DNA from: Saccostrea echinata
Taxonomy: Eukaryota
Reading direction: 5' to 3'
DNA: 64,000 nt
Assembly: GCF_033153115.1 (NCBI RefSeq)
Contig: NW_026889772.1
Span: forward strand, 6,262,001 to 6,326,000
Below, one piece after another: positions 29,144-49,848 of the stretch. Position numbers and translations under genes: made by a program. Under the pieces are notes generated by a model, which was given only the letters and a program-made list of their open reading frames with translations, was not told the origin of the DNA and did no database searches. The first letter of the stretch is position 1. Each line of letters starts with the position of its first letter.

Positions 29144-30333
29144 TTAGCTCTGATAAAGCCTAGCTTCACTATACATGTAATTGTTGTATATGTTGTAATT
29201 GTGGGTGATTCTTGTTGCTGATTGGCCAGCCTCACTGTAAGTGTCCGTGGTCTCAGTATTAAATCCTTCTTCCTCCTCGCTATCTTCCTGGGGGTCCGAG
29301 TTAGAAGAGGACCCCGTGTCACTATTCCCTGAAAAGTCAGAAGATTCAGAGTGCTCTCGTGCCCTGTCCATAGTCCTTAAACCCAAACATGAACTTAGCA
29401 TAGGCATGGACAGCAAACTCTGACGAACCCCTTCTCGAACTTTTTCACGAATTTCTTGGTCCATATTTTTGCGTATTTTTTCGTTTTCCCTCCTGAGCTT
29501 TTCCACTTCTTCCTTCAGGTAACTCATTTCTTCAGCTTTCTCATCAAGTTCACCGTTTTTAGCTTTGACTAATTTGGCACATAAGGCTTTGGCATCTTTG
29601 ATTTCTTTTTCCTTTTTGTCACAGTAATCTTTAACAATATCCTGGAAATGTCGGGTTTCACAGCCAGTAAAAGTGTCCCTACAGTCCTCAATTGTTTTCA
29701 TGAAGACGTTCATTCCTTCCACTAGTTTTTGGTGTCCTTTTGGATATTGCTGCTTGTGACATGTACCATAGAGAACAGCGTATCCCCTCTTAAACAGAAT
29801 TTCACTGATTGGGTGAAGTTGATTACAATTACTGTTCTTTATTTTGTTTTCTTCCTGCTCTTGCCTCGAGCGATAATATCGCACTTTCTTATTTAGTTTT
29901 TTAACAATAAAAATGTTTCGTGTCTCTAACAAGAGGGCATCTGTCATAACCTGAAGTGGCTGTTCTCGGTGTTGTAAGATCTGTATGAGCTTCTTGATCT
30001 TTTGTGAGGATGCCCCATGAATCTGAAAAAGAAGTTACCTCATCAATTTCAAAACTGGCATGCATAATTGACAATTTTACAAAAACCATGAGTAGAAAAT
30101 ATTTTTTTCAAAAAGTTTATTTTTAATTAATTCAATCAATTTAGCCTAAGTAGCAATAACTAATAATTTATGCCAAGGGAAAGATTTCAAATACTTACTG
30201 ACAAGTCATGTTTTTCAGTTTTGTTGATCTTATTATGTTGCAGTAAGTGCCTAAGAATGCGATCTGTTATAACCATGTGGCTCTGCAAATCATTCCTCAA
30301 GTTATGTAATGCCTGTTTCTCTGCAGAATCCAT
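29144..30333 (-). CDS. Cluster gene A: CARD-like + coiled-coil protein with acidic Ser-rich linker and C-terminal HNYNIYNN motif (~337 aa; exons 30199-30333, 29144-30022)
   Basis: Exon 1 is 45 codons (MDSAEKQALHNLRNDLQSHMVITDRILRHLLQHNKINKTEKHDLS) ending at a GTAAGT donor. The ttttcag acceptor continues in frame IHGASSQKIKKLIQILQHREQPLQVMTDALLL into the 267-aa ORF. Clear paralogue of gene B. Confidence 0.85.
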
Positions 30334-33300
30334 CTTCAGAATATTCTCTCTGCTTGAAAGGAAAATCAAATGTCTGAAACTCTTTCATGTAATTTTTCAA
30401 AGTTTCTCCCAGAATAAACCTGTGATCCTATGTAACGAAAGATTACCAGTATCAGTCTTGAAACAAAAGACGATAACCTGGTGCCAAGCTATGAGTCATC
30501 CAAGTATTGAAATTTAAAAAGACAGTAGCCTACCACCCAAACTGAGTTGGTCTACTTGTTTTTCCCTTGATCTGCAGGATTGAGTTATTGAGAAGCAGGC
30601 CCAAAAACCCCCTATTTATTTTATGATTGCACATATCCCCTTTCTCTACTCTTTTATAAAGAGAACCAATGTCTTGTTTCTCACAGGTTCACGGTGATTT
30701 CTACCAATTTATCAATTTTTGCATTATGGGTATTTTTTTATTGAAAATTTTTCCTGCAATTTTAGGAAAAAATATTCTTTATTTAGTATACCTTTTTTAT
30801 TGCACACCAAAAAAAAAATGAGAGCCCAATACAGGCCATTCCTTCATCTAAGATCTGGTATCGAATATTTTTGATGCATTTAGTCCATTAACTTAAATGA
30901 TTATTTACAATTTTTTTTTCCCACCAGAAAAGTGAAAAAGTAGCTCTGACAATTTGAATTATAATCCCTGCTAAATGGAGAGAGTATCAAACAACAACAA
31001 ATGAAAATACATTAAATTTTAACAAAGTAAGCCATGGACTAGACCCTCATCCTAAATTTCTCATTTTTTAAATAAGTTAATTGATCAGTAAAAAAAAATC
31101 ATCTGTTATTGAAAAATATGATTGAGATATAGGGCCACACATTTGTTATAGAATTCTTCGCAGCAAATGGAAACATTTCAGATAAGAACGGTATTGGGAA
31201 ATGTTTTTGTTAACTTTTAAAAATCAGCCCAAAATGTCTCCAACATTTGGTCCCAATAGTATTCTTAACACACCCTTTTCTTTTAGACATGAAAAATATG
31301 ACTCTGTCACTGCTTGATAAGGATATACATACATTTATTGTTTCAATATCATTTGCAATATCTTGGACTATATATTTGCTGTTCAAACATTAAATTAAAA
31401 AAAATATATCACATGAGGTTAAGAAGTGCTTAATTCTTTTTTTACGTTAACAAAAAAACTTTCTGTCTACATGAAAATGTAGATGTCTGTGAAGCTGTTA
31501 GTATCAATCAAAATAAACTCAGAATTAAATAAATGCATTAAGACTAAAAGTATCTTGTGAAGTATAGATCCAGTCAGAAGGAATGTTATAGCACTATTTT
31601 TTCAGAAAGATAAGTAATTTATAAACGGCACTGTTTTAAAAAGTCATGTAAATTATTTTGTAAAAACTTACCATTAATTTTGGTTATTCTCAGAAGCCAA
31701 ATACAGCTGGCTTTTGGGTAGTTACACTATAAATCCTCTCTAATTGTAGCCCTTTACCTTAGTGCTAAGTCACAAGTGCTGTACACTTGTATTTTAATCC
31801 AATTGACGTCACACAGACAGGGAATCGTAGTAAATTAAATGTATATATGTTACCTACTGGGATTTAAAATAATTGATGAGATTTTTATAGGGTGCAAGAT
31901 TAGAGCAGATTCTTATCTGCTTGCTGATCTTTTTTTAAAAAAAAGATTTTTGTTAAATCACTGCATTTTTAAATTTATTTTAAGGGGTTTTCTTCATGTT
32001 TGGTATGTACACTGTATTCCTGCAATGGATTTTATGTTTTAGGGACAATAAATGATTTTTAACCTTTTCTCTCCTATGTTTATAATGAATCTAATATTTT
32101 TATTCTAATATTATTCGATCATTTTGGAATGATATGACTGGATGAAATCATGTTTATTATTTTCCTTCAGTAAAGACTTCGGTACAATGCACAGGGATTG
32201 AAATGAGCTACAAAGATTAATACTTAATCGTTAATCAGTGGAAGATCCAGAAGCTCGGGAAGGGAGGGGGGGGGGGGGGTTGAAGCCTGATGGACCATAA
32301 ATTTTCTACAAGTTCTATATTGTAAATGGACTACTGAGCTTGAGTTCAGACTTATATAATTGAAGTATACTGTATAGAGGCAATGATTTTTTTGTTTTTG
32401 TTTTATTTTGTTTTTTGTTTTGTTTGAAAGATATATGGCATCAGTTGAAGTGACAGAAGTCCCTCAGTTGCAAATGGACTAAAATTGCATTTTGTTATTT
32501 TAAAGGTTAAACATAATCATACAGGAATGGAAGCAGTATGTATTATACATGATAGACTTATTAATAATAAGATAATAAGTGCAGGAATCTATTAATGTAC
32601 ATTACATGAGAGCTTTTGCAGGTTTAGAAGTTTTTTCCTGTAGCTTGTATATTTTTTATCACATTTATTTTATCACACATCAAAGTTATTCTTGGTGTAT
32701 GAAGAGTCCTGCTGCTATTCTTGGAATACAAATCTTCTTCCTAGTTTTCTTGTTAACATTCAACCCAGTGAGTTGGCGGTATATAAAGAATTTCTTAATT
32801 GTACAATCTGTTTCATTTTCAAAAAATAAAAGAACATTTATTTTTAATTGCACAACTTTTTAATAGCTTGACAAAAGCAAATTGATAATAGTATGAAGTA
32901 TGGTATTGAAATTCAAGATTTATTTCAAAACTCTAATTATGCTGTCAGTTCAGCTAAGATAAAATCAGATTTCACATGCAAGATAGTGTAAGGTAGTTTC
33001 AAAATTCCCAAGTCTTTGTCAAATGATAGAATGTCTAGTGAAGAATTTCTCTGGATAACCAACAAATCAAAATCTAAAGGTTTAATTTGAGTTTCTCAGA
33101 CTGGTATCTGGGCTGATTTGAATTGAATATTTGAATTGGAAGCCAGCAGTATTTACCTAGTTCTTACTTATATGTGTTCGTGTTGGGGGTCTGGGTTTGA
33201 ACCTCCCCCGAGGAGGGTTAAATACCTGCTTTATTAGTAATTTATTGGCACTCGTCTAAGGATCCCCTCTCACTGTTAAGTTTAATCCATATTTTGTGAT

Positions 33301-35109
33301 ATATCTTTAGGTCAGAAGATTGTGTTGCCTGTATTTCTGTCCAAGAGACTATCTTATCACAGTGGGCATTACCAACTTATAAATCCTTAACCTTGAAAAA
33401 GAAAATGCAAAATGATAGAGAGAAATCGATAAAAAATTAAACCCAATAGCACAAAAATCAGCCTATCCCTTTCAAATAAGACTCATTATATGCTTAAGTT
33501 TGCACATGCATTATCTAATAGCTAAACTTGATGTTTTTATATTGCCATGACAATATTTTAATGTGACAAGATGTTATGTGTTGATTAAGCTGTGACATTT
33601 TAGCAGAGTTGTTTTAAAATTGATTTTTTTTTTATTTGTAAACCAGTTTTTAAATAAATAGATAAAATAATGAAGATTATCAATTGATGAGATAAAATGT
33701 TGACATCTTTTTGTGAAATGATCATATGTTCCTGTATCACAATAGTTCACAGATCCATGTGCATAAAAATATATGACCAATGGAGACAATAAGATCAAGC
33801 TTGTTTATGAAGAAATGGTGTAATCAAGATAATATTTTATTTTGTAACAATTTCCATATAAAGTTAATGTCTGCATGATTTGTCGTTTACTTAGTGCTGT
33901 TTGGGTATTCTGTACTATAACATAGTAAGGACATAACACATGAACATACCTCAAACCACAATATAAATCAAAAATTAAACAAGGCATAAATGAGGAAATC
34001 TGTAATTGATCTGATGTTCTCGTGGTTTTAACTGTTTTTTGTTGATTTTTTTTAATGGTTCAGACTTTTGCATGCAGTTCTGACATTAAAATCAATGATT
34101 TGGAACTCACGATAACTTGCTTTTGTCTCTGTTTAAACGCTCTGTAAGTACTATTGATACCTGTTTATGAGTCATTGCTATGGATTTAAATGCACTGTTA
34201 CACTTTAAATAAAGCTTTCATTCCATTGATATGCATATTGTGTTTTAGAATTCCTATGGTGTTTTATTTATATTGCTCGTCAAGAGTGTAATAATCCCAT
34301 ATATAAGTTGATAATCTTTTTTAGCTAATGGTGTTATGTAAACTAAGGAGGGTTATATTGGAGGTGATGATGTAAGGGGTCTCAGATTAGTATATTAACA
34401 CTCTTGTGTGGTGTATTCAATATGCATGAACTGATAGATATGACATGCTGTTGCAATTTGTCATTTGTGAGACCTGAGATTGTTCTCAGATATATTTGAC
34501 ATAGTTGTCCTTAGTACCAGTAATATCATATGCAAGAAGTGAAAGTACCAGTAAAGGGAAGGATTGAAACTTAACATTTACTTAACATATTTATGTTTAC
34601 CCTCCCTGAAAAAAAGAAATAAATGAGACACTTTTTGCAAGCTTTTTCTTGCATTTTTAAAATGCAATTAGTCACATTTTATCTGTATTGAATATCATTT
34701 CTGTATTGAATATTATTTCCCCCACAATGTATTAATCTCAATCTCACAAAGTAGTGCATTCTGTTTGAGCTTAATGGCTTTACCCTGTTTTAAGCCATGT
34801 TAATCCCCTCTAGATGAGGGGGTCTTTTTTCTGTTCTTTGTCCCCTTTACTTACTTTGGCATTGTAGGTAAAGGTCTATTAACAGTGGTGGTCAGTTATT
34901 GACTTTGGCACCGACTCAAAATGGTAGAACCCATTTCTGAACAGGAATGTTCTTGCAAATGTATAGCAAAAGAGAAGGACATTGAGAAAAAAAAATCACA
35001 CAATCTTCAATAACTTTATTAATAACAAATTTAACAAATTTTTAACTAATCTAATAAACTTAACAAAAACACAACAGTTTTCTAACTAAGATTCACTACA
35101 AAGTTTGAT

Positions 35110-36249
35110 CTAATTTTGATAAATTTTTGTGTCACTGTACATATGGTTGTTGTAGATGTTGTAGTTATGGACAATTTTTGATCCTTTTTGAGTCGTGGAA
35201 GTTGTCATTTTATTTGATGCAGGAACATCACTGTCAGACTCACAATCAGACTCAGAGTCCGAAAGAGAATGTTCCTGAGGCTCGGGGCGTTTTACAGGGG
35301 AACGCTGCCGTAATTTCCTGTCCAAAATGTCTTCCTCGGTTTCGACATAAGGAACTGGATCTGTGGGAGACAGACGGGGAAGCATAAGAAGGCGATCTAC
35401 ATTCTCCTGTACTTTGGTTTTGATTTCTATTCCCATTTTCTTCCGCATGGATTCATTCTCAACTTTCAGCTTCATAAGTTCATCTTGTAAGTCTTTGATG
35501 TTCTTCTGTTTTTCTTCCAGGTCACTGTTTTTGCTTTTCACAAGTTTGGCACACACCAGTTTTGCATTTTCAATTTCCTGGTGCTTCTTTTCTTTGTACT
35601 CGGCAATAATTTCTTGAAAACTTTGTCTCTCGCTGGAAGGCTCCAAACTCTGTCGACATTTAGTGATATCGCCAACAAATTTGTTAATGTCTTCCACGAG
35701 AGCTTGGTGGCTTGTCCCTGCTGTAACTTTTCTGGATTCTCCATATATTGTTAAATATCCACGTGTGTAAAGAATATCTGCCACATCATCTAACTGTCCA
35801 AAATAAGAGGATGTCTGGTTTTCCTGAGCTTGGAGGCGTTTACGGCAGAACCGAACTTTCTTCCTCAGTTTCTGAACAATGTAGTCATTTTTCACATCAA
35901 GAAGAAGTGTCTCGGTTAGAGTTTTCAAAGGCTCCTTTCGATTTTTCATGATTTGCAATATTCTTTTTACTCTTTGGCAGTTGGCACCCAGTCTCTGAAA
36001 AAAATCAAGGTCAAGAATTAGAAATTTCTTTTCAAATATTAAACATAGTTATTGATTGAATGTTAAAAGAAAAAAAGGAACTGTAAGATTTTGTTGGCAA
36101 ACAAAGATACATACTGAGAGTTCATATTTTTCAGCCTTTGTGATTTTTTGGTTCTGTAGGAAGTGAACGAGCATCTTGTCTGTGATTACTGCACAATTCT
36201 GTAGTTCCTCTTTAACATTGTGTAGAGCTTGGCGTTCTGCTGGATCCAT
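35110..36249 (-). CDS. Cluster gene B: CARD-like + coiled-coil protein with C-terminal HNYNIYNN motif (~339 aa; exons 36115-36249, 35110-35994)
   Basis: Exon 1 is 45 codons (MDPAERQALHNVKEELQNCAVITDKMLVHFLQNQKITKAEKYELS) with a GTATGT donor. The acceptor continues RLGANCQRVKRILQIMKNRKEPLKTLTETLLL. Colinear with gene A (e.g. AKLVCAKLVKSKN vs AKALCAKLVKAKN). Confidence 0.85.
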
Positions 36250-38327
36250 TTTCTAGTTTCTTGAGAAAGTTCCTGTTTTGGATAAAAAAAAAAATTGATT
36301 TTCTTGGTCTTCTTTTACCAAAAATCACACCTTTCCTTTTCTCCTGTGACATTTAAATGATCAAACAAGCTAGAGACACACTAATTTTGGAGTCGCATGA
36401 CGTAAATCGGGTTAAAGTTGGCAGGAAATCAGTATTTTAGGAGCATGCTTATCACTACTTAAACTTGTAAGATAAATTAAAAATTCAGAGAATGATAGGG
36501 CAGTATATTGATACAGTTCTTAAAAAGTGACAGTTAAGAATTCCAGGTGAATTTTGATTTGCTTTCACAGAAACCAGATTTTTTTTGTTGATTGATATTT
36601 AATATTTAAAGAATAGTTTCAAATTAAAATTGAAAAAAAATATTGTGTTGCTCTTTATAAAAATGATTTAATAAATACATGTAGTTATAAATTGGTATTT
36701 TGTTCTCATGAATTTTTTTTAGCAGGATCATGTACTGAAGACAACTGTCACTAAGCACTATTTTTATCATACAGGACCTTTGTCTAAAAGACTTTTCAAC
36801 ACTGCAAAATTAATCGAATATAATTAGGGTCATGAAAAATAAGTATATGATAAAAGATAAGGAGGACCCTATGTACTTACCCCGAAATCTTAGATGGTCA
36901 AGACTGCGAGTGCCGCCCGTCCAATCTTTGTGCCGATAGCTGGGATTTCCCAAGCTCATGTGAACATTACATTAGAACTGTGTCAGTATTTCATTTACTT
37001 TATGACGTCAATGACTACCTTGGATTTAAATGACCAAGAATTAAAAGCCTTATGTTGAATGTCCAACCTAGGGATATTTAAATTCTTCTCGTGTTATTAC
37101 CTTTATTTTGGTGATTGGACGCAGTTCAACTCTTCTGTTGGAGTACTGTCAATAAATTTCTCCTACATTTTAAAGATGTGTATTGGGGTATTGACACTAA
37201 TATTGTACCCTTTTTGGCAGCCATCTGTCCTTTAATTATCACTTGGACCCCCTCATTCTATGTATTGAGGGAGATTAAGACTTTCTGCTGGGTAAACAAA
37301 GATCACTTGAAGTAGTCTTATATTGGGAAGTAGTCCTAAATTTTCCTTTGGAGCGGCTATTTGTAACTTATTTATTTAGCAATCTTTGGTAAATCTGCTG
37401 AGGGTTACAATGAAGTTTTACCTTTAGTTAGAAAGAGAAGCATTATTAAAATAAAATTATAGAAATTTCTTTTAAGCGTAAGGAAATATAAACTTAAGGA
37501 TAATGAATATGTTGATTTAATAATTTTCCTATAAAAGAACCATTTTTATATATGTATGATAATACTTCATGGTTATGGTACATATTTATTTTGGTATATT
37601 TAATCAGAGTATTGTGATAATGAAATGGTTAAGTAATCATTGAAGGTTAAGAGTCATGTATAACTTAAGTTGATTTCATTGATTAAAAAATAAAACAACA
37701 CACAAAAACTTTCAGAAGTTATTAATAGTAGGAGATGATGTAGTTTCCGAAAATTGGTTACTGTAACGCAACTGATGGTAATGTAGCTTGTGATTATATC
37801 CAACTCGGCTTAAACCTCAGACAAGTCACAAAATTATGTGGATCCTGTGCTATTCGCAACACATGTGTAGGATTTTGAGATCTTTATAGATCAATAAGAA
37901 CAACACTGTGCTTTTGTAGAATGAATTGTATTATGGAAATTTACATCAACATAACATCATGGTAAAACAAGAAAGAGAAGAGAAGTGCGTGCTGCGCATT
38001 CTCTTGCCATGTATGTTGACAGCCCAATATAGTAAGGCTTCTATTAAGCATCCATTAGGCTTCTATTAGGCACCCAAATAATAGGGCCTCCTACTACATA
38101 ACATAATTAGGCCATCATTAGGTGTCAGGCACCTAGTTATAGGGCCTCCTACCACATAACACTAGACCTCTAAGACATCCAATATTATTAGGATGCCATT
38201 AGGCTAACAGTATAGCTAGTGATAAACAACAACAATAAAATTACTATAAGTATAAAAGTTAACTACTCAAATCTATAACTCAAATAGAAAACTGTATATT
38301 ATGCAATAAAAAACAGTACAGTTACAA

Positions 38328-39457
38328 TTAATACAGAACACTGTCAGCAAGGCCAGGGAAGTCCAGTGTGTTCTGATTCTCATAGTGTGGCTTTTCTGAT
38401 TGGTCGGATTCTGATGTCGAATCAGAATCTAGGTCCATGGCATTGGCACCGCCCATTTGAAAATGTCCATGATTATGAATGTTGATGGTCACACTGGGTT
38501 TAGAGGAGGGTCTAGTATCCACAGGATTCAATCGAAGCAGCCTTTCTTTGACAATTCTGTCTACAGTTTCTCGAATTATTTTGTCTTTTTCTTCTCGTTC
38601 TCGCTCTAGCTCACTTTCAAGTTCTTCCACTTTTGTTGTCAGTTCATCATTTTCTACTTGAAGACTGTCAATCCTTTTCTTCCACACAGTTCTTTCCAAT
38701 CGAAGATCATCAGCAATGGCCTGTGTTTTCTTCTGGAGGTATTTACTTTGCAGATCTTTTAATGGAACATCTGAATTTTCATCCATGGGATCCATTGCCA
38801 TTCTGCAGTATTTGAGGGCTTTCACAATGTCATTGCCATCACAGGTTTGCTTGTTTGTCTCTTCTGAACAATTCCCTTTATTATCACCATGAACCAGTGG
38901 AGCCACAGAATTGTAGAAGCTCTCAAACACCACAGAGGGTTTCGGATATTTTTTGGTCTCCTTGAATGGTTTTCCATCCATGACGAGATCTGTTTCTTTT
39001 AGTTCTCGGAGTCTGTGTTGCTGTTTGTGATGTCGAACCATTTTTTGCATTTTATCCACACAGTACTGGTTGATGTTCCTTTCAAGCATTAAAGCTTCTG
39101 TAAATGCACTGAAACCTTTTTCTTTTTTGCGCATTATTTCTGCTAATTGGGTGTTTCTCTTTGAACTCTGTCTTATTCTCTGAAAGAACAAGAATTCATG
39201 ATTGCAAAAAAATCATTGTAGCACAAATGCAGGTACATTTTTTGGAGCAAGATGGCAGCAGATTTTTCACAAAGTATAATTATTTTTAAGCAGACATTTG
39301 AAATGTTTTTGAGTCAGTTTACCATGAGACACTTTCGGTCCCTGTGGGAGATCATGTCTGTACTTTCTAGTCGGCGAAGAACAGCATCAGTCACTAGAAG
39401 GTTATTGCTGATGTCTTTCCGACAAGTTTCTAAAGCATACAATTCACTGGTGTCCAT
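38328..39457 (-). CDS. Cluster gene C: CARD-like + coiled-coil + RHIM-like protein (~328 aa; exons 39323-39457, 38328-39179)
   Basis: Exon 1 is absent from the ORF track: 45 codons MDTSELYALETCRKDISNNLLVTDAVLRRLESTDMISHRDRKCLM with a GTAAAC donor. The ttctttcag acceptor continues RIRQSSKRNTQLAEIMRKKEKGFSAFTEALML. Heptad-rich segment, then tail VTINIHNHGHFQMGGANAM. Confidence 0.85.
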
Positions 39458-41024
39458 GTTTGGCTTTGAAAATAGAATTCAGATAAAAATTAAATAATTT
39501 CAGGTGCATTAGGAAAAATGAGTATATTTGATTTGCTTTTGAAATAATACTTACAGGTTTAGCCTGGTCGTATCATGAAATTCTGATCTGTAGGTGATAC
39601 TTTCCTTTTAATTTTGTTTCTTTGAATAAAAATATTTAATGAATCAATGACTTAAAAGAAAGAGGACTGGAAATTTGAGCTAGCAAAGATATTTTGTCTT
39701 TTCTTTAAGGGTGATCATATGTGACAGTCACTAGAACTTTACTGGTCAGTAAATGTGAAATACTTGGAGTAGGTTAGGTCCACTGAATAGAATTCTGAAC
39801 AAAGAACAATACAAACAGCATAATTCTGAAATCCTACCAGTTTCTTTTGTGAAAAAGCCTCAGTTCACAAGTCTGTATACCATTTCATACACTCAGTTAA
39901 CAAAGTTAGTGGATGGGGTAATACATGTGTACTAGCTGGCTTCATCTGTTCTGTTTGCTTATGTATTTTAGTCATACATGATCTTTCTCTACAGCTATTC
40001 AATTTTTGTTGACAATTTTTAAAAAAATATTTTTAAAGTTAGATTCTAGGTTTATTTTAGAAATTAAGGGAAAAAATAATGTGTATTATGTCAATGAAAT
40101 TTCTAATGGAGATAATATCTATTATCTCTAAAACTTGTGATATTTACAAACTTCAGTGAATCGATGTTAACATTGTATACCATTCAGACCTGTGCACAGA
40201 TTACTTATTACTGATCTGTCAAAGTTGTTTGTTTTGATATTTTTTGCAGGGTTAAAGCCTTTAGATATAGATAGAATTCCTGTAAAATCCCTAACTTTGC
40301 TTTGAAGAAACATTAGCTTACATTTGGCAAGGAAGTTGCTTCTGACCAAGAAATGGGTCCTAACAGACCAACATCATTTGAACATGCTAGGTCACATGGT
40401 TTATAAATGTAACATTCTCATGAGGGCTATAGTTTTATAGTGTAAGATGAATAAGAGCCCAAACTTGGCACAAAGGTTGAACATGGCTAAGGATGTGTCC
40501 TGACTATGAAGTATAACTCTTTGGACAATGTCACAAAATTGTATGATGTGTAATATAATGATGTTTCTTACATATCAGTAATTTATTATCATTTTTCTCG
40601 ATACTTATCTCTGTATTTTGTAATTGGATAATCAGCATAAAATTTAAAAATTGTGCTTAGTTTGCAGCAGTTTTGATTGCTTCATAAAAGGCTGTCCCAT
40701 TCAGAGATCCGGAAATTTTCTATTAGGCATGCATTTTATTAAATTTTTACTTTTAAATATCAGAATTCTTTAACCATTTTGAAATTCAGGGACAAAATCA
40801 ATGGAAATATTGTACATACTTATTTCTAGCTTTTGATTTTTTGACAGCTACCTAATTTTTAATGTCTGAAGTTGAACCAAAAGTAAAGAAATTAGAGTTA
40901 TGTCCCTCTACATGTACTGCCATAAAACCCACCACAAAAAAAAGCAAAACAAAACAATGTATAAAAACTAGATAGATATGTTTATATTCTATTTGTAAGA
41001 GACTCAGATTAATGCAACTTTAAT

Positions 41025-42252
41025 ATGTCCACCGCTTTTCAAGCGGAGAGGGGTATATATTGATGTATATAGTGATGGGTGTCTCTATGACATCCTTTTA
41101 TCCATACGGCTGTAACACTTGGGGATACCCATCTCTTATCTGCAACGTACTCCTCTTATACAGAGTTCAACACTAACTTTTCTACCCATAAGTACAGCTG
41201 GACTAGTGCTTCTTTACTTTTACTTAAGCCTGCAGGTGTTTTTATTAGACCGTCAAAAAAATGCATCATACATGTTTTTGTAACTACTGATTTTGAATAT
41301 AATATCACAAAGTGCTTCTTACACTATTCGTTGAAGTGAATTGTTCTTTTCCATGAATTTGTTGAAATCAGGAAGTATGATCATGTTCAATCTTGTTCCT
41401 TTATGAATTACACCCAAGATGTCCGACATCTGTCTGTGTCAACATGTACTAACGATCACTAAAGCATTTTACTTCATATTGATCTATACAATTAAGCACT
41501 CAATTGACTTGGAATTGGGCAACTACCCACCAAAAGCTAAAAATACATTTTGGGTTTGCCATTAAAAATTGTCGAAATCAGACATCTGTAATTATTTTTA
41601 TTGTTTACCTGAGAAGTTTTAATTGGTCCGTTTGGACTGATTAGCCACAGATTTTATTGGTCCAAATGAAAATGTTTTAGTAAGTCCGAGACTAAAAGAC
41701 TAATGTTATGCCCAACCCTGCTATACCATGAAAGAAAATGTAATGAGATTTTCATTTTAGAATCTTTATTACATAGTTCCACTGTGCACCTTCTATTTTA
41801 CGATTCAATCAGAGAGATATTTGGGGTTTCCCATAGCAAAATATGGACACTGCAATTTTTTCTATAACATTGGGGTACCAATCTCTTATCCACAATTCCT
41901 CCTATACCTGAATGAAATATAATGAATTTTTATTACACAGTGCCATTGTACATTGTATATTACATTTCAATTAGACAGATATTTGAGTTTCCCATAACTA
42001 AACCTGGACACTGCCAACCATTCTATAATGGGGGTACCCATCTGTTATCTGCATCTCCTCCTTTACCACTGAAAAAATTTTAAGAAGACTTTCACAGAAT
42101 CTTTAGTACATTGTGTCATTGTGGACCTATTTTATGTTCTGATTGGACAGATATTTTGGGTTTCCCTTAGCCAAAAAATGGACTTTGCCATTATACTCCT
42201 GTGGTGGCGGGGGTATCATTTTGTGAGCTCAGTGCTCACAGTACCTCTAGTT
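41025..42252 (+). mobile_element. Degenerate Helentron/DINE-like element with internal ~155-bp repeats
   Basis: Repeated GGGG[A/G]TACC[C/A]ATCT[C/G]TTATC...CTCCT and GACAGATATTT..GTTTCCC blocks. The 3' end has GGGGGTATC and a hairpin GTGAGC...GCTCAC followed by CTAGTTTTT. Confidence 0.5.
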
Positions 42253-42573
42253 TTTATTGAATGTGTACATGATGTCTTTTTTTAGGATTCATCAATCACT
42301 TTGGCTGTTTCTTCATCTCCTATATATTTTATCCAACATGCAAAAGATTTCATCAGAACTCTTTCAGTATTTAAATTGAGATCTGTATCTAGTACCTGTT
42401 TTGACTGCAAACCTGTCTTCTTTTTGTTTATCATATGTACAGCAACCAATTTATACATAGTTCCATAGCAACACAGCAGGAAGTTAAAAATAAAACTATT
42501 GAAAAATAATTAAAGATTTTCATATATTTTGGTTGGCAAAAGAAAAAAAAAATTTGAATTTTAATCATTAATT

Positions 42574-43534
42574 TTAAGCAATTTTTTGTGTAAAAGATTT
42601 TCTTAACACACTTTGCCTTGTCCTTGCAACAGTTTGTCTTAGGATATCATTTTCCATCTCCAGTTCTTTATTCTTTTGTTCGTACTTTTTTAACTGTTCC
42701 CTGATGACACAAGTTCTTCTCTTATAGTCTGATTTCAAATCTACCATAGCTTTCTCTACTTCTTCTAATTCCCTCATCCACATAACAAACTCTGCATTTT
42801 TAGACAGAATGATTTTGACCATCTCTGGAAATGATTTAGCTTGGCCAAAGGTGTCCTGTAGCTGCTGGTGTGCTGAAGTTGTTGTGCTTATTGCTTCTTT
42901 GGATTTATGCAAGTGAAAGTCTATAGAATTATTGTTTACAAAGTATTCACCAAAAGCAAACAGGTAGAGATTGCTGAGTTCTTGTTGAAGCTTAAGAAGC
43001 ATCCTGTGTCTTCTCTCCTCCACTTTCTGTTTGTGAATAAATTCCACTTGATCCACCTCATCTTTCAGTTGCTTGGCAAGATCTGCAGTGCGTTTGTCAG
43101 CCTGGAGTTTGTGGATAAGGAATTTCAGTGCTCCAGGCTTTCTTGCTATCACTTGGAAGAGGAAGTTTTCTGTCCTCTGTGACATTGTGCTTATATCCTG
43201 CACAAAAAATGCATGTTGAATTATAATAGATTAAAATGAAGAATGAAATAACCAAGTATTGAATTGAATTTCCTCATGAATAAAAGTTATTTAAATTGTC
43301 TTGCTTTTTTTAATCTCAAAATAACAATTTTCATGATATTTAAATGTGAATGATTCTGTTTAAAAAATATAAATGATTATTTACACTACAGATACAAACC
43401 GTAATTTTGTTGAAGTCTCTCCCCTCCATGACCCCATGGTTTACAAACCACCCCAGGAACTGGGTTGTGGGGCGAAGTCTCTCCACCAGGGTTGTCCGAC
43501 AATTCTCTAGGGCCCTTCTCTCACAGTAAGCCAT
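42574..43534 (-). CDS. Cluster gene D: CARD-like + coiled-coil protein without low-complexity tail (~252 aa; exons 43400-43534, 42574-43197)
   Basis: Exon 1 is 45 codons (MAYCERRALENCRTTLVERLRPTTQFLGWFVNHGVMEGRDFNKIT) with a GTTTGT donor. Exon 2 begins DISTMSQRTENFLFQVIARKPGALKFLIHKLQADKRTADLAKQL. This is the most canonical CARD-like pattern of the four. Confidence 0.85.
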
Positions 43535-44236
43535 TGAGAATGTCCAAAAGTTGGCATTTCAGGGCATTGTTGTGTTAAGGTTTTGAAATGTAATTACCAT
43601 TTTTGTTGACTTTCAATTAGAATTATACAGTTGACAGGGTCTTGTTTTCAGTTTTTATTGCTTTTAACCTTGATCCTTTTTACTATTTGCATTTAACTGC
43701 TAGTGTATTTTTTTTTTTATTTCTGTGAGTAAAATTTCTTTAAGGGTATGTAAAAACACACACATAAGGAATTAAGACTTGGTTGTTTTATTGTTTCTAG
43801 CTGTAATGAATATTTGCTGGCATTAACTACTGACTCCTTGTACAGATTCTATTGTTGCAATAATTACTATCTTTGTAGATGAATCAATTAGCCTTGAGAT
43901 GAACAAATAATTCAGTGACTACTTTACAAGACTTTTTCCATTGAGTTTAAACTAAGTGAAATTAGAACAGTTAATAGATATAGCAAAATAAACTTGAGTG
44001 TTAATTAGGACATAATTTACACACACAGATAAATGATTACTCATGCCTGTTCACTTTTTAAGCATTTATTTAATTCAGTGCTTTCATCTTCACAACAGGA
44101 GATGGTTTTTACATCAAAGGTCAGTCACATCAGAGAAAATTATCATTCAAACCTTTTCATGCTTAATACTTGCACAGGTTTCAAGATATTGAAGGAACAA
44201 AGGGGAATAACTCTTATTTGATTTGTAAGTTTGTCA

Positions 44237-45811
44237 TCAATAATCGTCTCCATGTAGAGATTCAGAATTTGCAAATGACATGGTTGATTCTGGGCGATAG
44301 ACAAATTCAGTCTCTTCTTGATGTTCAAAGGTCACACTTGGTCCTTGATTTTGGTTGGTCAGCTGTTGTCTGTGGGATCCTGTAGAAATATGCAGACGAG
44401 AACTAGACCGACTTCTGCCACTTTGTACAGACTCTTTGTGAGGTATTGAAGAATTAGAAGTTCTCTCAGGAAATATATGATAGAGATGCAGAGTATTTAT
44501 TGGGCCATGGAAGTGATTGTGATGTTTATTGTCAGAACTTTCATTCTGTTGGTCAGCTCTAGACAAGTTTGTGATGGTTTTGGAACCAGGATTGTTTGAT
44601 TTTGGCACTGTATTTATGGGATTTTCTGTTTGGCAGTGAGTACTAGTACATTCTGCTTTCAGGTTAGCACTGCATGCTTTATCAACTGAAGTTTTATGAG
44701 ACTTTCGCCTGGCCTTTGACATATTGTAGTTTAATTTTTCAGTTTCTTTCAATTTTTCCTTTAATTCATGATACAATTTGTGGAGCTTTCTGCTTTCATT
44801 ATCTCTATGGGCTACCTTTTGCTTCTCATCCTCGAGTAATTTCAGTATCTTTGTCTTTTCTGAAGCATTAAGTTCTTGTTTGTCATATTGTTCCTGCAGT
44901 TTTCTCTCCCATTGTTGATTGCACATTATGAGACCTTTCTCTATTTCTATGACTTGTCTCCTGCACTCATCCTTAATCTTCTCTTTGTCTTCCTCATATT
45001 TTTCTATCTTCATCTCCAGTTTCTGGATTTGATTTTTCTGCCTGATGCTTATTTCTCTGTATTGTTCATGCAGCTCATCTTTATCTTTGTTACTGGTTAT
45101 CCTTTGGTTTTCTGCAACACTGTCCACAAGGTCATGAATTTGCTCTTTGTGGTCCATCTTTGACAAGATGTTTTCAGCTCTTTTGAGTCCTAGATTTTCA
45201 GATTCTATAATACTTATCACGGCTTGTCTAAATTTTCTTTCTCTGAGCTTGAACTCCTCTAATAACATCTTACAGTGGACAAGTGTACCTACACCTTTCA
45301 GTTTTGTTTTTGGTAGGAAGGCCTGCAGTTCGTCTGAAAAAATAAGCTCCCTGCAGCGATTCTGACACTTTTCAATTGATTTTACCTCTTCTCTCAGCTT
45401 CTTGGTGAAAGGAATCGATTCTGGGATATCCGAGAAATCAAAAGACTTGCTAAGTTGAGCAAGGGCTTGCAGAATCTTTGAGGATTCATCCAAGACTTTT
45501 TCAGTGGGTAAAAGTTCACCTGCATTTGCATGACAGAAGGAATAAATAATATGAGCAGCTTTTGTTAGCTGATTAACATCTGTTGAGCAGTCCTCCTCAG
45601 TTTGTGTCCAGCATTCTGTGTACACTTTTTTGGGAGAAATAATTTTGGTAGCTTTCTGACGATTTCTTTGTTTTTGGTTTGCACGTTTAGTTGACACCCC
45701 TGTTAATTCTTTTCCCGTGGTTCTGTTTGTGTTAGGAACAGTTGATTCTTTGGCTGATGGTTTGTATGTGATATTCACAGTTGAGGTTTCTTTACCTGTA
45801 GTTTTATTCAT
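44237..45811 (-). CDS. Cluster gene E: 524-aa coiled-coil protein with His/Asn-rich motif and C-terminal SFANS motif
   Basis: 1.57-kb open frame in AT-rich DNA. Basic Thr-rich N-terminus with short internal repeats (NKTTGKE/NRTTGKE), long K/E/Q heptad region, HHNHFHGPINTLHL, ending TMSFANSESLHGDDY. Probable upstream exon ~46027-46116 with a GTAAGT donor. Confidence 0.8.
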   Translation of the reverse strand: MNKTTGKETSTVNITYKPSAKESTVPNTNRTTGKELTGVSTKRANQKQRNRQKATKIISPKKVYTECWTQTEEDCSTDVNQLTKAAHIIYSFCHANAGELLPTEKVLDESSKILQALAQLSKSFDFSDIPESIPFTKKLREEVKSIEKCQNRCRELIFSDELQAFLPKTKLKGVGTLVHCKMLLEEFKLRERKFRQAVISIIESENLGLKRAENILSKMDHKEQIHDLVDSVAENQRITSNKDKDELHEQYREISIRQKNQIQKLEMKIEKYEEDKEKIKDECRRQVIEIEKGLIMCNQQWERKLQEQYDKQELNASEKTKILKLLEDEKQKVAHRDNESRKLHKLYHELKEKLKETEKLNYNMSKARRKSHKTSVDKACSANLKAECTSTHCQTENPINTVPKSNNPGSKTITNLSRADQQNESSDNKHHNHFHGPINTLHLYHIFPERTSNSSIPHKESVQSGRSRSSSRLHISTGSHRQQLTNQNQGPSVTFEHQEETEFVYRPESTMSFANSESLHGDDY

Positions 45812-48453
45812 ACCTTGAAATTTTAAAAAAGGAAATTAATTTTGATTGCTATAATCAAGAATTATTGACTGCATATTTAAACAACAAATCATCAGTTATA
45901 TATTTTGGTACATTTTATGGCTGATTGGATGAAATAGTTCAAGAAAGTGATAAAAATTGTGGATCAGAATGATGTTTTAGAAAAAAATGTTCTTAATTTC
46001 AGTGATGAAATATAAGCAAAACTTACCTTCAAAGTTGCATATAAATATAAATCTATTAATTTGCACCTCTGGATTGAATTGCTCTGCAGAGTTTCTAGTG
46101 ACATAGTGCAGTGTGCCTGAACAATTAAAACAATGTACAGGACGTACGTCTTAATCTGTTCCATCAATGACTGAGAATCCATTGTCATATATATATTGTT
46201 CGTGACTCATTCAATGCATCTTGAAGTTGCTTTGTAATACCTGAATTTGTTTTGTCAATGTATGGTTCTGCATAGATAAAAAAAGTCTTACTGAAAGAGG
46301 AAAATATTAATACAGTAGTGTTTTAAAAAATTCATCAGTTGTTGGGGGGCTTTATAGAATGAGGTCTTTTCTTAATTGATCTTGTAATAGTTACTACAAA
46401 AAATGTTGGAAAGTTTTCATCTTGATATATTTCTTGCCATATTTTGACCCCAAAATATATATTACCATATCAAAATACCCACATAATGTGGCTAAAATTT
46501 AGCTTTAACATTAATATCTTAATATAGATGTGAAAAGGATGTGTGTTTTAATTTGTTTTGTTTTTTTTTTTATTTTTAATTTATAAATTTAAAGTTGATT
46601 TAAGATATTGAAGACTTTGATTTATTTACTTAGAGGTTATCAAAATGCATTAAATTTTATAAATAAAAAGTGTTTGGAATGTCTAATATGCTTGTACGTC
46701 GTTAGTGTTTCAGATATGAATGTTCAAGATACTAATGTTCAAATATACAATGCTATTGGTTAAATGTACTGGAGGTTAGGAGGTCTGATAGAATACTAAA
46801 ATGTTGCCACATCAACTTGGTCAGACACACTTTCTTTGATTGTATATAATTTTATGTTGTCCTGCTTTGAGTTTGCCTTCTGGGTCATAGTATAAAAAAG
46901 TATAGTTTTGAAAAGGCATTTATTTTTATCTGCAATAAAAAGTGTACTAAAAAGTAATTGATAATTGTAGACTTGATTTTTGAAATACAATGTAGTGGTC
47001 AAATGCTGTTGACTTTCACTTTAAATCTAAAAAAAAAAAAAAAAAAAATTTGCATATATTGATGTCAATCAACTGTTGATTTTATGAGGGAAAAACACAC
47101 TGCAATTTTTTTTCTAAATAAATTAGATACTGTATGTTTCATTATACTTAGAAGTATTATATTCTTTTATTATAAGTCTATTGCACCTATTGTATGGACA
47201 TAGTTTTTAGAGATTATGAAAGCAGCTGAATTCTTTATTTTTCACTGCTGTAAATGGTATAGTGGTGATTCCTTTTTCTAAGCCATTTCTAAATGAACTC
47301 TGTGAAACAAAAGCTAAGTCAGATCTTTAATACTGAGTAATATGCATTCATATTTGGTTATCTAATTATCTAATAATTAAATACTTTTATGATTAGGTAA
47401 AAAGTTGGCACTTAATCTTGTCTTGAAAAAGAACCACTGCATGATTTTAACTATCCTGAGACCTGTTACAGTAGAGATCAATCAGAGATATAATTATAAT
47501 TCTAGATATCCATTATCCTGATACATACTCTGATCCTATATGACTGACAGTTCTTCACCTTAAATTTAAACCTCATATATATATCAGTCTGGGAATAAGA
47601 TCATAAAATAGATTATTTGAAAATTTAATACATGTATTTTTTTTTTTTTTAAAAAAGAAGCAAATTTACCATTGGGGGGAGGGGGGGGGGGATTTAAACA
47701 CAGTCAGAAAACTTTACTAAATTCCTTTCTTAATGCACTAATTTTTTTTTTTTACCCAACATTTTATAATTCTAACTTCTTTTTTTGGAGGGGGGGGGGG
47801 GGGGTTACATTCCTATACCTTAACATGTTGTTAAATCTCTGTATGTCAGGTCACTCTTCTTATTAATAAGGATATAGTGAAAAACAAATTCAATATACAT
47901 ATATATGTATAAACCATGTACAACACATTTGATACTAGATGAATAATAAATAATTTCTGGACATTTTATTTAATGTACATATATTTACAACTAAAGAAGA
48001 GAGAATGACATTTTTCTGTAGGGCATATCCAATGTACCTAACCTATGATAAAGATAGTCTAAATTAAAAATCATTGTACTATGTATATATGTGTACAAAT
48101 GTTTTTAGACAAAAATCAGCATACATTATTAGGGGCCTTGAAAAGATATTAAATGACCCAATATCTGTTTTGCTTAGAAAAATGCACAAAAATGACCAAA
48201 CATATAATTTTAGCTGGTACTTTCTCAAGATTAGTTTTAAAATAGGTGTGTAAGGCTTCATTAGTCACACACTAGCTGGTACTTCACTAATTAGAACTGA
48301 TCTTCAATTACAAGAATACAGGGGAGAATTCAAAACTATGTTGCATATATCTTAAAGAAAGCTGTCTTTGCTTTCAGAAAAAGCAAAGTCTGTTAATGAA
48401 AAGTCTGAGTCTCATTTTTATGGAATTATCTACAAGATGTTTAACTTAATATT

Positions 48454-49335: not shown

Positions 49336-49848
49336 ATTTTGTTTTTTTTATACAGAATGTCCATGAATATTCTTGAAGCAAAAGTGGACAATCATTAATT
49401 TAGCTTTTTTGGATAACTTTACCTCTGAAGAAGCTTTAGTATCTGAAGTTTCTGTATCACAGTCCACCAAACTTGATTAGTGGTTTGTGGTAAACCCAAT
49501 TGCTTTGTGTGGTGTTTCAATTCATGCACAACTCCAATATCTATTCACTGGACCTTTAACAGTGTTAAATAGATAAAACCAATGTTCCCACATTAATTAA
49601 TTATTCATCACTGATGCCTTTTAAGATAGCTATCTTGTTTTAAACAGGTGTTTCCAAAAGAAAATCAGCTGTGTATTGCATTGCAGTTCCATAAGTAGGA
49701 GGAGTGATTGTCAACAATTTCTTTTTCAATGTCAACAGATGAATTATTTTCAGGGTTTAAAAAACTGTAAAGACCTCTCTTTGATCATCAATTTTCAAAG
49801 ATGTTTTTTTTATGACATAGTAAAGAGAGTAAATGATATATTTTTACA

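What the first reader, a model, noticed from the sequence alone, without database searches (positions are those of the whole stretch)
29144..43534. Four paralogues carry a CARD-like domain split by an identically placed intron (45-codon exon 1, phase 0)
Seen: genes A, B, C and D each have exactly 45 codons from ATG to a GT donor (30333-30199, 36249-36115, 39457-39323, 43534-43400), a 120-200-bp intron, and an in-frame AG acceptor. The ORF track breaks these apart and misses exon 1 of C entirely. Joined, the first ~90 aa follow the CARD helix pattern: M-x3-E-x2-AL-x3-R-x2-L..., a helix ending L-x3-G/K-[IV]-[TMS]-x2-[ED], then SQR/K-x3-L-x2-I-x2-RK-x2-A/GF-x2-F/L-x2-AL. Conserved intron position despite low identity is strong evidence that these are real, homologous genes.
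Basis: partly seen in the sequence, partly recalled or inferred. Interest (0 to 1): 0.8.

Follow-up and report, generated by a model that had tools for sequence, protein, structure and literature searches.

The report
Split-CARD coiled-coil adaptor genes in oyster
Four neighbouring two-exon genes of the oyster Saccostrea echinata really do encode a diverged CARD (a death-fold signalling domain) cut by an intron at the same codon; they belong to a larger oyster-specific CARD plus coiled-coil family, so this is a sound but fairly ordinary addition to a known domain family.

Summary
Genes A-D (minus strand) each have a 45-codon exon 1, a GT..AG phase-0 intron (176, 120, 143 and 202 bp) and one long exon 2.

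- **Public models:** they reproduce the junctions of A (XP_061183119, 337 aa), B (LOC133191383, 339 aa) and C. D has no model of its own; NCBI fuses part of D to C.
- **CARD reading:** it is supported. A family profile hits BCL10 CARD (E 1.8e-6) and RAIDD CARD (2e-4). AlphaFold2 gives a six-helix bundle (pLDDT 85-94). A search of 48,161 PDB chains returns CARDs in the top 31 places (Z 14.4-9.1). Pfam CARD stays below threshold.
- **Gene D:** its first half is clearly CARD-like (E 4.7e-5 to 1.7e-6). Its second half is only marginal (E 0.12).
- **New here:** the cluster runs beyond the window. Two more two-exon paralogues and three canonical CARD plus coiled-coil genes lie on the same strand. 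At least 11 CARD genes in this genome have a 45-codon exon 1, cut between Pfam CARD positions 40 and 41-43. The intron is therefore older than these four genes.
- **Range:** relatives were found only in oysters and pearl oysters.
- **Function:** a role as oligomerising CARD adaptors is inferred, not shown.

Earlier scan notes come only from this same window.

The parts
30199..30333 (-). Gene A exon 1: ATG plus 44 codons, CARD helices 1-3
   Evidence: identical to residues 1-45 of public model P0013 / XP_061183119
30023..30198 (-). Gene A intron, 176 bp, GTAAGT..CAG, phase 0
29144..30022 (-). Gene A exon 2 (292 codons plus stop): CARD helices 4-6, helical linker, coiled coil, acidic Ser-rich linker, C-terminal Asn/Tyr-rich motif
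   Evidence: Pfam CARD sub-threshold on the public full-length model (E 0.014, residues 7-66 against HMM 2-62)
36115..36249 (-). Gene B exon 1, 45 codons
   Evidence: equals residues 1-45 of P0001 (NCBI LOC133191383)
35995..36114 (-). Gene B intron, 120 bp, GTATGT..CAG, phase 0, with an in-frame stop
35110..35994 (-). Gene B exon 2 (294 codons plus stop)
35821..35994 (-). Gene B second half of the CARD (residues 46-103, helices 4-6)
   Evidence: AF2 model helices H50-61, H67-75, H79-103, pLDDT 85-93; aligned to BCL10 CARD
35383..35619 (-). Gene B coiled-coil helix (residues 171-249)
   Evidence: AF2 single long helix, pLDDT 84-97; matches coiled-coil chains (ranks 47-50); 74/79 identical to the C. 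virginica orthologue
35113..35178 (-). Gene B C-terminal Asn/His/Tyr-rich motif (last 22 residues)
   Evidence: no Pfam family; only 10/22 identical in C. virginica
39323..39457 (-). Gene C exon 1 coding part, 45 codons. The exon itself reaches 39463 and is spliced to an upstream exon
   Evidence: NCBI model P0022 maps to 39463-39323 then 39179-38331; contig of run X1 aligns to exactly 39323-39463 with unmatched letters at both ends
39180..39322 (-). Gene C intron, 143 bp, GTAAAC..CAG, phase 0
   Evidence: no contig of run X1 lies on it
38328..39179 (-). Gene C exon 2 (283 codons plus stop)
   Evidence: the Ostrea edulis orthologue P0026 is a stand-alone 328-aa model, equal to 45 + 283
38436..38495 (-). 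Gene C RHIM-like motif (core F-Q-M-G). 20/20 identical in Ostrea edulis while its tail is 20/35
   Evidence: no Pfam RHIM match
43400..43534 (-). Gene D exon 1, 45 codons
   Evidence: E 4.7e-5 against a profile of canonical CARD exon 1s and 1.7e-6 against all other members; covered by a contig of run X1 (43403-43555)
43198..43399 (-). Gene D intron, 202 bp, GTTTGT..CAG, phase 0
   Evidence: no X1 contig on it
42574..43197 (-). Gene D exon 2 (207 codons plus stop): putative CARD helices 4-6 (marginal), then coiled coil; no C-terminal motif
   Evidence: E 0.12 against the exon-2 half profile; no public protein of similar length; residues from 43002 down are used in NCBI's D-C fusion model P0022
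42004..42066 (-). Small exon that NCBI's model P0022 uses to join D exon 2 (donor at 42613) to C exon 1. It lies in repeat-rich DNA
   Evidence: high-depth repeat contigs over 41600-42400

Best explanation
A-D are real, transcribed, tandemly duplicated two-exon genes of the oyster Saccostrea echinata.

**Architecture.** Each gene encodes:
- an N-terminal CARD (six-helix death fold, nearest by sequence to the BCL10 and RAIDD CARDs);
- a helical linker and a roughly 80-residue coiled coil;
- a fast-evolving acidic, Ser-rich linker;
- in A, B and C only, a short Asn/His/Tyr-rich, beta-prone C-terminal motif, which in C looks like a RHIM.

**The intron.** It falls after codon 45, at the end of helix 3, between Pfam CARD positions 40 and 41-43. 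It is inherited from an older CARD gene lineage. The same 45-codon exon 1 occurs in two further two-exon paralogues, in two canonical CARD plus coiled-coil genes of the same about 95-kb cluster, and in three dispersed CARD genes.

**Likely mechanism (inferred, not shown).** The coiled coil holds the protein as an oligomer. This raises the local CARD concentration, so the CARDs can nucleate or join a homotypic CARD filament with one of the many (at least 147 matches) CARD proteins of the oyster, as CARD9/CARD11 do with BCL10. The C-terminal motif would add a second, amyloid-type homotypic contact.

Shown here: gene structure, homology, fold, conservation, transcription. Inferred: oligomerisation, the partner, and the direction of signalling.
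For: **Gene structure**
- Structure and splice sites.
- Public models equal exon 1 plus exon 2 for A and B, and cross the predicted junction for C.
- Intron-less 338-aa orthologue ORFs lie on 1.17-1.26 kb Logan contigs (P0003, P0004, P0030). The same exon 1 followed by intron read-through is seen in genomic ORFs (P0016, P0018, P0021).
- Contigs of run X1 cover only the exons of C and D. The C exon-1 piece ends exactly at 39323 and 39463.

**CARD identity**
- Profile against PDB: BCL10 CARD E 1.8e-6, RAIDD CARD E 2e-4.
- Exon-1 profile: RAIDD residues 1-44, E 1.3e-4.
- Pfam CARD is the best, though sub-threshold, family for A, its S. cucullata orthologue and the Pinctada homologue. UniProt names the Pinctada homologue 'CARD domain-containing protein'.
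- AF2: six helices, pLDDT 85-94.
- Structure searches: Foldseek TM 0.8 to Apaf-1 CARD; VIA Z 14.1-14.4, with all top rows CARDs.
- ESM Atlas neighbours are CARD clusters.

**Shared intron**
- Neighbouring genes J, K and L have an exon 2 that reaches Pfam's CARD cut-off on HMM positions 42/43-84. J and L have 45-codon exon 1s.
- Dispersed genes L004, L006 and L007 have 45 codons.
- Further paralogues M and N have 45 codons.
- All 11 exon-1 peptides align without a gap.

**Purifying selection**
- B against C. virginica: exon 1 42/45, rest of CARD 51/58, coiled coil 74/79, but linker only 33/68.
Against: - Pfam PF00619 never reaches its cut-off on A-D.
- The second CARD half of A-C has lost the canonical L-L-x-x-L-P-x-R-G-P-x-A-F signature. 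A profile of canonical second halves does not find it.
- D's second half is only marginal, D has no stand-alone public model, and its fold was not predicted.
- The AF2 alignment had only 10 sequences.
- No contig bridges a junction in S. echinata itself for C or D, and the X1 run is only guessed to be RNA.
- No interaction, oligomerisation or immune-induction data exist.
Confidence: 0.8

Rival explanations
1. The proteins are decoys or brakes rather than activating adaptors. Their diverged CARD caps or sequesters CARD filaments, as the CARD-only proteins ICEBERG and COP or viral CARD proteins do, and the coiled coil only raises avidity.
For: The second CARD half has drifted from the canonical signature and is invisible to a canonical profile. 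There is no effector domain. ICEBERG is among the structural matches (rank 39). The family is young, tandemly expanded and fast-evolving outside the CARD and coiled coil.
Against: The CARD and coiled coil are strongly conserved between oyster genera. That fits either role. Nothing here tells activation from inhibition.
Confidence: 0.2
2. D is not an independent gene. It is either the 5' part of a D-C read-through gene, as NCBI's 482-aa model suggests, or a decaying duplicate, so only three of the four are stand-alone CARD genes.
For: NCBI model P0022 joins D exon 2 (43002-42613) through a small exon (42066-42004) to C. No database protein of D's own size exists. D lacks the C-terminal motif, and its exon 2 has no BLAST similarity to A-C. 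The mRNA of C has a spliced upstream exon.
Against: D has an intact 45-codon exon 1, consensus splice sites and an open 207-codon exon 2 with its own stop. Its exon 1 is covered by an X1 contig. The fusion model omits D's CARD and passes through a repeat-rich exon. The Ostrea edulis orthologue of C is a stand-alone 328-aa protein.
Confidence: 0.2
3. They are the oyster orthologues of the vertebrate CARD-CC proteins (CARD9/10/11/14) and seed BCL10-MALT1 (CBM) complexes.
For: The order is CARD then coiled coil. The best sequence match is BCL10 CARD, and Z is 10.6 to CARD9 and 10.4 to CARMA1 CARDs. Molluscs have BCL10, CARD-CC and a MALT1-like paracaspase (PMC5978004).
Against: No CARD9/10/11/14 chain appears among the profile hits even at E 10. 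Only 10 relatives turn up in 1.84 billion representatives, all from oysters or pearl oysters where the source is known. A conserved orthologue would be widespread. The coiled coil is about 80 residues, not about 300, and the genes form a multi-copy tandem family.
Confidence: 0.08
4. The N-terminus is just a generic helical or coiled-coil region, and the CARD resemblance is pattern-matching.
For: No Pfam hit above threshold. The single-sequence AF2 model was poor.
Against: Significant profile hits to two solved CARDs. All 38 chains with Z of 8 or more among 48,161 are death-fold domains, apart from one de novo designed protein and one untitled entry, and the top 31 are CARDs. Bona fide Pfam-positive CARD genes share the same exon structure.
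Confidence: 0.02

Closest known systems
BCL10 CARD (PDB 6bze, 8czd, 2mb9)
   Same: Best sequence match of the family profile (E 1.8e-6, end to end over residues 5-92 against 8-94). Same six-helix CARD (Z 11.2, rmsd 2.3 A over 98 residues).
   Different: BCL10 has a Ser/Thr-rich tail and no coiled coil. A-D have a coiled coil, and A-C an Asn/His/Tyr-rich end motif. They are not orthologues, since the family is restricted to oysters.
CARD-CC family (CARD9, CARD10, CARD11/CARMA1, CARD14)
   Same: N-terminal CARD followed by a coiled coil that oligomerises the protein. Structural match to CARD9 (Z 10.6) and CARMA1 CARD (Z 10.4). This is the model for the proposed mechanism.
   Different: No detectable sequence match. 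The coiled coil is much shorter, there is no MAGUK part, and the genes are multi-copy, tandem and lineage-restricted.
RAIDD/CRADD and caspase-9 / Apaf-1 CARDs
   Same: The exon-1 profile matches RAIDD residues 1-44 from Met1 (E 1.3e-4). These give the best structural matches (Z 13.7-14.4, rmsd 1.8 A). The canonical CARD genes that share the intron are nearest to these CARDs.
   Different: Different partner domains (death domain, caspase, NB-ARC). None has the coiled-coil plus motif architecture.
Bivalve and bivalve-iridovirus CARD + RHIM proteins (BiIV1_006R; PMC12452177)
   Same: A CARD combined with a RHIM-type motif in a bivalve setting. Gene C has a conserved RHIM-like core (F-Q-M-G) about 35 residues from its end.
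   Different: BiIV1_006R's best hit is a caspase-3/9-like protein. No viral relative of this family was found in IMG/VR. The Pfam RHIM model does not match C.

Membership tests
CARD (death-fold superfamily, Pfam PF00619) | Six-helix antiparallel bundle of the death fold | tested here: met
   AF2 with the family alignment gives H3-19, 24-32, 38-46, 50-61, 67-75 and 79-103, pLDDT 85-94. Z 14.4, rmsd 1.8 A over 98 residues to the caspase-9 / Apaf-1 CARD. Modelled for B only; A and C are in the alignment; D was not modelled.
CARD (death-fold superfamily, Pfam PF00619) | Closer to CARD than to the DD, DED or PYD subfamilies | tested here: met
   Ranks 1-31 of the unbiased search are CARDs (Z 14.4-9.1). 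The first DD is at Z 9.0, and DED and PYD are at Z 8.2 or less.
CARD (death-fold superfamily, Pfam PF00619) | Pfam PF00619 score at or above the gathering cut-off (23.9 bits) | tested here: not met
   A 15.8 bits, S. cucullata A 17.5, Pinctada homologue 19.8; B, C and all split exons give no hit. Neighbours J, K and L reach 23.9-27.7 bits on exon 2 alone.
CARD (death-fold superfamily, Pfam PF00619) | Significant profile similarity to experimentally solved CARDs | tested here: met
   BCL10 E 1.8e-6, RAIDD E 2e-4. Exon-1 profile against RAIDD E 1.3e-4.
CARD (death-fold superfamily, Pfam PF00619) | Gene D: both halves of the domain recognisable | tested here: inconclusive
   Exon 1 E 4.7e-5 to 1.7e-6. 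The exon-2 half gives E 0.12; it is the best non-member hit but not significant. The joined D protein was not built or folded.
CARD (death-fold superfamily, Pfam PF00619) | Homotypic CARD-CARD binding or filament formation | not testable with these tools
   Needs biochemistry.
CARD-CC (CARD9/10/11/14) | CARD followed by an oligomerising coiled coil | tested here: met
   CARD at 1-103, helical linker, then a single long helix at 171-249 with pLDDT 84-97. Coiled-coil matches. Oligomerisation itself was not tested.
CARD-CC (CARD9/10/11/14) | Sequence orthology to CARD9-like proteins | tested here: not met
   No CARD9/10/11/14 chain at E up to 10. Only 10 relatives in 1.84 billion representatives.
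BCL10 | CARD followed by a Ser/Thr-rich tail, without a coiled coil | tested here: not met
   A coiled coil is present and the tail is acidic and Ser-rich with a terminal motif.
RHIM (Pfam PF12721) | Match to the RHIM model with the core tetrad [IV]-Q-[IVLC]-G | tested here: not met
   No Pfam hit for C's exon 2 or for the 47-aa piece around the motif. C reads F-Q-M-G, a near-miss of the tetrad, and is 20/20 conserved in Ostrea. A and B have no Q-x-G.

The most novel reading that the evidence does not exclude
The family (A, B, C plus the two paralogues beyond the window) may be a new class of double-homotypic adaptor. An oligomerising coiled coil would present a BCL10-like CARD at one end and a RHIM-like or Asn/His-rich amyloid-forming motif at the other. 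This would physically couple CARD-filament signalling to RHIM-type amyloid signalling in lophotrochozoan innate immunity. It could also be the host pathway that the CARD + RHIM protein of bivalve iridoviruses imitates.
Probability: 0.2. Interest if true: 0.7.

Novelty: new member of a known kind. Interest (0 to 1): 0.4.

Why it matters
- **Annotation:** it assigns a domain, a fold and a plausible role to RefSeq 'uncharacterized' oyster proteins that Pfam leaves blank. One is mislabelled 'myosin heavy chain-like' in Ostrea.
- **Gene models:** it flags a probable mis-fusion in NCBI's model of LOC133191548.
- **A marker for diverged CARDs:** an exon-structure signature (45-codon exon 1, phase 0, cut at CARD HMM position 40/41) marks a subfamily of oyster CARD genes. 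It can be used to find diverged CARDs that profile searches miss.
- **Oyster immunity:** oysters depend on hugely expanded innate-immune adaptor families. A tandem cluster of CARD plus coiled-coil genes carrying putative amyloid motifs is a concrete candidate for work on oyster antiviral and cell-death signalling.

The CARD itself and tandem expansion of death-fold genes in bivalves are expected, so the surprise is moderate.

Tried and rejected
- **Pfam on the eight separate exons:** no CARD hit, since half-domains are too short. Pfam on B's public full-length model also gave none.
- **Single-sequence AF2 of B:** poor, pLDDT 55. It was replaced by the 10-sequence alignment run.
- **Word search with D exon 2:** nothing, not even a self model.
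- **Whole-library phmmer with B:** only 10 hits, so no deep alignment was possible.
- **IMG/VR viral contigs:** no relative.
- **Pfam RHIM on the C-terminal pieces:** no hit.
- **Oyster BCL10 and the shared intron:** the candidate split CARD genes L005 and L004 turned out nearest to caspase-9 and RAIDD CARDs, not BCL10. The question stays open.
- **BLAST between coiled-coil parts:** the five [ILVM]-S-[FC]-A-N-[SC] genes of the window are not detectably related to A-D, and no CARD exon was found for them.
- Whole-protein analyses used only public models returned by the tools (P0001, P0013, P0022, P0026 and others). D, which has no such model, was analysed exon by exon only and was not folded.

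Full report
**Source and setting**

The window is Saccostrea echinata (tropical black-lip rock oyster), contig C23:6262001-6326000. It is AT-rich (about 33% GC). It carries a run of minus-strand genes with long coiled-coil ORFs.

**1. The observation**

I read the four loci on the minus strand and recomputed them. Every coordinate in the finding holds.

| Gene | Exon 1 (45 codons) | Donor | Intron | Acceptor | Exon 2 codons |
|---|---|---|---|---|---|
| A | 30333-30199 | GTAAGT | 176 bp | CAG | 292 |
| B | 36249-36115 | GTATGT | 120 bp | CAG | 294 |
| C | 39457-39323 | GTAAAC | 143 bp | CAG | 283 |
| D | 43534-43400 | GTTTGT | 202 bp | CAG | 207 |

- All four introns are phase 0 and contain in-frame stops.
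- The four exon-1 peptides align without gaps (58, 31 and 22% identity to A).
- Public models confirm the splicing:
  - P0001 (NCBI LOC133191383, 339 aa) is exactly B exon 1 plus exon 2.
  - P0013 (XP_061183119, 337 aa) is exactly A.
  - P0022 (LOC133191548, 482 aa) crosses the predicted C junction.
- Orthologues of B exist as intron-less 338-aa ORFs on 1.17-1.26 kb Logan contigs. Genomic ORFs from relatives show the same exon 1 running into a GTN codon (P0016, P0018, P0021).
- I laid one run, guessed to be RNA (X1). It covers only the exons of C and D. Its contig for C exon 1 aligns to exactly 39323-39463, with unmatched letters on both sides. Neither intron is covered.
- No contig bridges a junction, so direct junction reads in this species are still missing for C and D.

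**2. What the domain is**

*Sequence evidence*
- Pfam gives nothing on the split exons or on B's full-length model.
- CARD (PF00619) is the best, sub-threshold, family for A (15.8 bits), its S. cucullata orthologue (17.5 bits) and a Pinctada homologue (19.8 bits, against the 23.9-bit cut-off).
- UniProt already names the Pinctada homologue 'CARD domain-containing protein'.
- A profile of ten public family members (A, B, C and orthologues; alignment A3) hits the following in the PDB:
  - BCL10 CARD at E 1.8e-6, residues 5-92 against 8-94;
  - RAIDD CARD at E 2e-4.

*Structure evidence*
- AlphaFold2 with that alignment gives six helices in residues 3-103 at pLDDT 85-94. It then gives two lower-confidence helices, one long helix at 171-249 (pLDDT 84-97) and a disordered tail.
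- Foldseek lists almost only CARDs (TM 0.79-0.82 and rmsd 1.9 A to Apaf-1 CARD).
- VIA-align gives Z 14.1 on Foldseek's list.
- In a Foldseek-independent pass over 48,161 chains, VIA-align gives Z 14.4, rmsd 1.8 A over 98 residues. Ranks 1-31 are all CARDs. DD, DED and PYD follow at Z 9.0 or less.
- ESM Atlas neighbours are CARD clusters.
- The intron after residue 45 lies at the end of helix 3.

**3. The intron is older than these four genes**

- A six-frame Pfam-CARD scan of the whole genome finds at least 147 matches. Most are unsplit (HMM 2-84). About nine start at HMM positions 37-45.
- Three of these lie 39-59 kb beyond the window on the same strand:
  - gene J (L001) has a 45-codon exon 1 then GTGAGG, and an exon 2 scoring 27.2 bits on HMM 42-84;
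  - gene L (L003) has a 45-codon exon 1 (Pfam CARD HMM 1-40) and an exon 2 scoring 23.9 bits on HMM 43-84;
  - gene K (L002) has the same exon 2 (27.7 bits), but its exon 1 was not found.
  - All three continue into coiled-coil ORFs.
- Dispersed CARD genes on contigs C54 and C30 have exon 1s of 45, 45, 45, 44 and 49 codons.
- A search with the second CARD half of A-C found two more two-exon paralogues at C23:6346698 and C23:6358519. Each has a 45-codon exon 1, a phase-0 intron (532 and 934 bp), a 285-288-codon exon 2 and an Asn/Gln/Ile-rich C-terminus.
- Eleven exon-1 peptides align without a gap. Their profile matches RAIDD CARD residues 1-44 from Met1 (E 1.3e-4).
- A profile of canonical exon 1s alone ranks D, A, C and B at the top of 1,055 window ORFs.
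- The second halves of A-C are not found by a canonical profile, so they have diverged. D's second half is marginal (E 0.12).

**4. Family range and constraint**

- phmmer of B against 1.84 billion representatives finds 10 proteins.
- Named members come from Saccostrea echinata and S. cucullata, Crassostrea virginica, Ostrea edulis (where the orthologue is mislabelled 'myosin heavy chain, clone 203-like') and Pinctada imbricata.
- Identity by region:

| Comparison | Exon 1 | Rest of CARD | Coiled coil | Linker | End motif | Tail |
|---|---|---|---|---|---|---|
| B vs C. virginica | 42/45 | 51/58 | 74/79 | 33/68 | 10/22 | - |
| C vs Ostrea | 42/45 | 49/58 | 51/65 | - | 20/20 (RHIM-like stretch) | 20/35 |

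- B and the C orthologue are homologous over CARD plus coiled coil (BLASTP E 9e-12).

**5. Gene D and the NCBI fusion**

- NCBI's P0022 starts at an internal Met of D exon 2 (43002) and leaves it at an alternative donor (42613).
- It then passes through a 63-nt exon in repeat-rich DNA (42066-42004) and enters C at 39463.
- The Ostrea orthologue of C is a stand-alone 328-aa protein, equal to 45 + 283.
- D has its own intact start, splice sites and stop.
- I therefore read D and C as separate genes and the fusion as a probable artefact or a rare read-through. This is not settled.

**6. Mechanism**

Shown here:
- a conserved CARD;
- a conserved coiled coil;
- a variable linker;
- a short conserved end motif.

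Inferred:
- The coiled coil oligomerises the CARD, so it can seed or join a CARD filament, as CARD9/CARD11 do for BCL10. Molluscs have BCL10, CARD-CC and a paracaspase (PMC5978004).
- The end motif may give a second, amyloid-type contact.
- A bivalve iridovirus encodes a CARD + RHIM protein resembling bivalve proteins (PMC12452177), so such combinations are used in this lineage.
- A decoy or inhibitor role is equally compatible with the data.

**7. Comparison and novelty**

- The domain is a CARD, nearest to BCL10 and RAIDD.
- The proteins are not orthologues of BCL10 (they have a coiled coil and no Ser/Thr-rich tail). They are not orthologues of CARD-CC either (no sequence match, restricted range, multi-copy).
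- I found no paper on this family.
- It is a new, diverged member set of a known domain family in a genome where CARDs are massively expanded.
- The interesting but untested part is the CARD, coiled coil and amyloid-like motif architecture.

**Limits**

Whole-protein work used public models only, and D was treated exon by exon.

Noticed in passing
L009:1511-3032 (G000:C23:6346011-6347532) and L010:1290-3222 (G000:C23:6357790-6359722), minus strand: Two further two-exon paralogues lie outside the window. Each has a 45-codon exon 1, a phase-0 intron (532 and 934 bp) and a 285-288-codon exon 2. Their C-termini are Asn/Gln/Ile/His-rich (S-I-H-L-Q-I-N-N... and S-I-F-I-N-N-H-H...V-I-L-I-Q-N), so five family members carry a beta-prone end motif.
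   Followed up: partly
L001:1472-3596, L002:1217-3331, L003:1861-5809 (G000:C23:6362001-6388000), minus strand: Three canonical CARD plus coiled-coil genes (Pfam CARD at or above cut-off on exon 2 alone) sit in the same cluster and on the same strand. Their CARD is cut at the same place, and two have 45-codon exon 1s. The cluster spans about 95 kb.
   Followed up: partly
window 42004-43002 and 38331-39463: NCBI model LOC133191548 (P0022, 482 aa) fuses an internal part of gene D to gene C through a 63-nt exon lying in repeat-rich DNA. This is probably a mis-fusion, since the Ostrea edulis orthologue of C is stand-alone.
   Followed up: partly
window 38436-38495; 35113-35178; 29147-29212: C-terminal motifs. 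C has a RHIM-like stretch (core F-Q-M-G) that is 20/20 identical in Ostrea edulis. A and B have H-N-Y-N-I-Y-N-N-x-M-Y-S, identical in S. cucullata but changed to K-N-I-T-V-I-N-N-H-I-S-S in C. virginica. No Pfam family matches either.
   Followed up: partly
window 44237-58047, minus strand: Five coiled-coil genes end in [ILVM]-S-[FC]-A-N-[SC] motifs. By BLAST, F, G, H and I are related to one another but not to A-D. No CARD exon was found for them.
   Followed up: partly
window 20899-26197: A very long tandem repeat gives a 1,623-aa artefactual ORF (YIRYSYYRV... units). It is satellite-like DNA just upstream of the gene cluster.
   Followed up: no
window 41600-42400: Interspersed repeat: contigs of both laid runs pile up here at high depth (up to 2,450x) with 90-95% identity and many rearranged joints.
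   Followed up: no
whole genome G000: At least 147 six-frame matches to Pfam CARD. Many sit in about 337-aa open frames with near-identical scores on contigs C5, C33 and C36, which suggests a large recently amplified single-exon CARD gene family.
   Followed up: no
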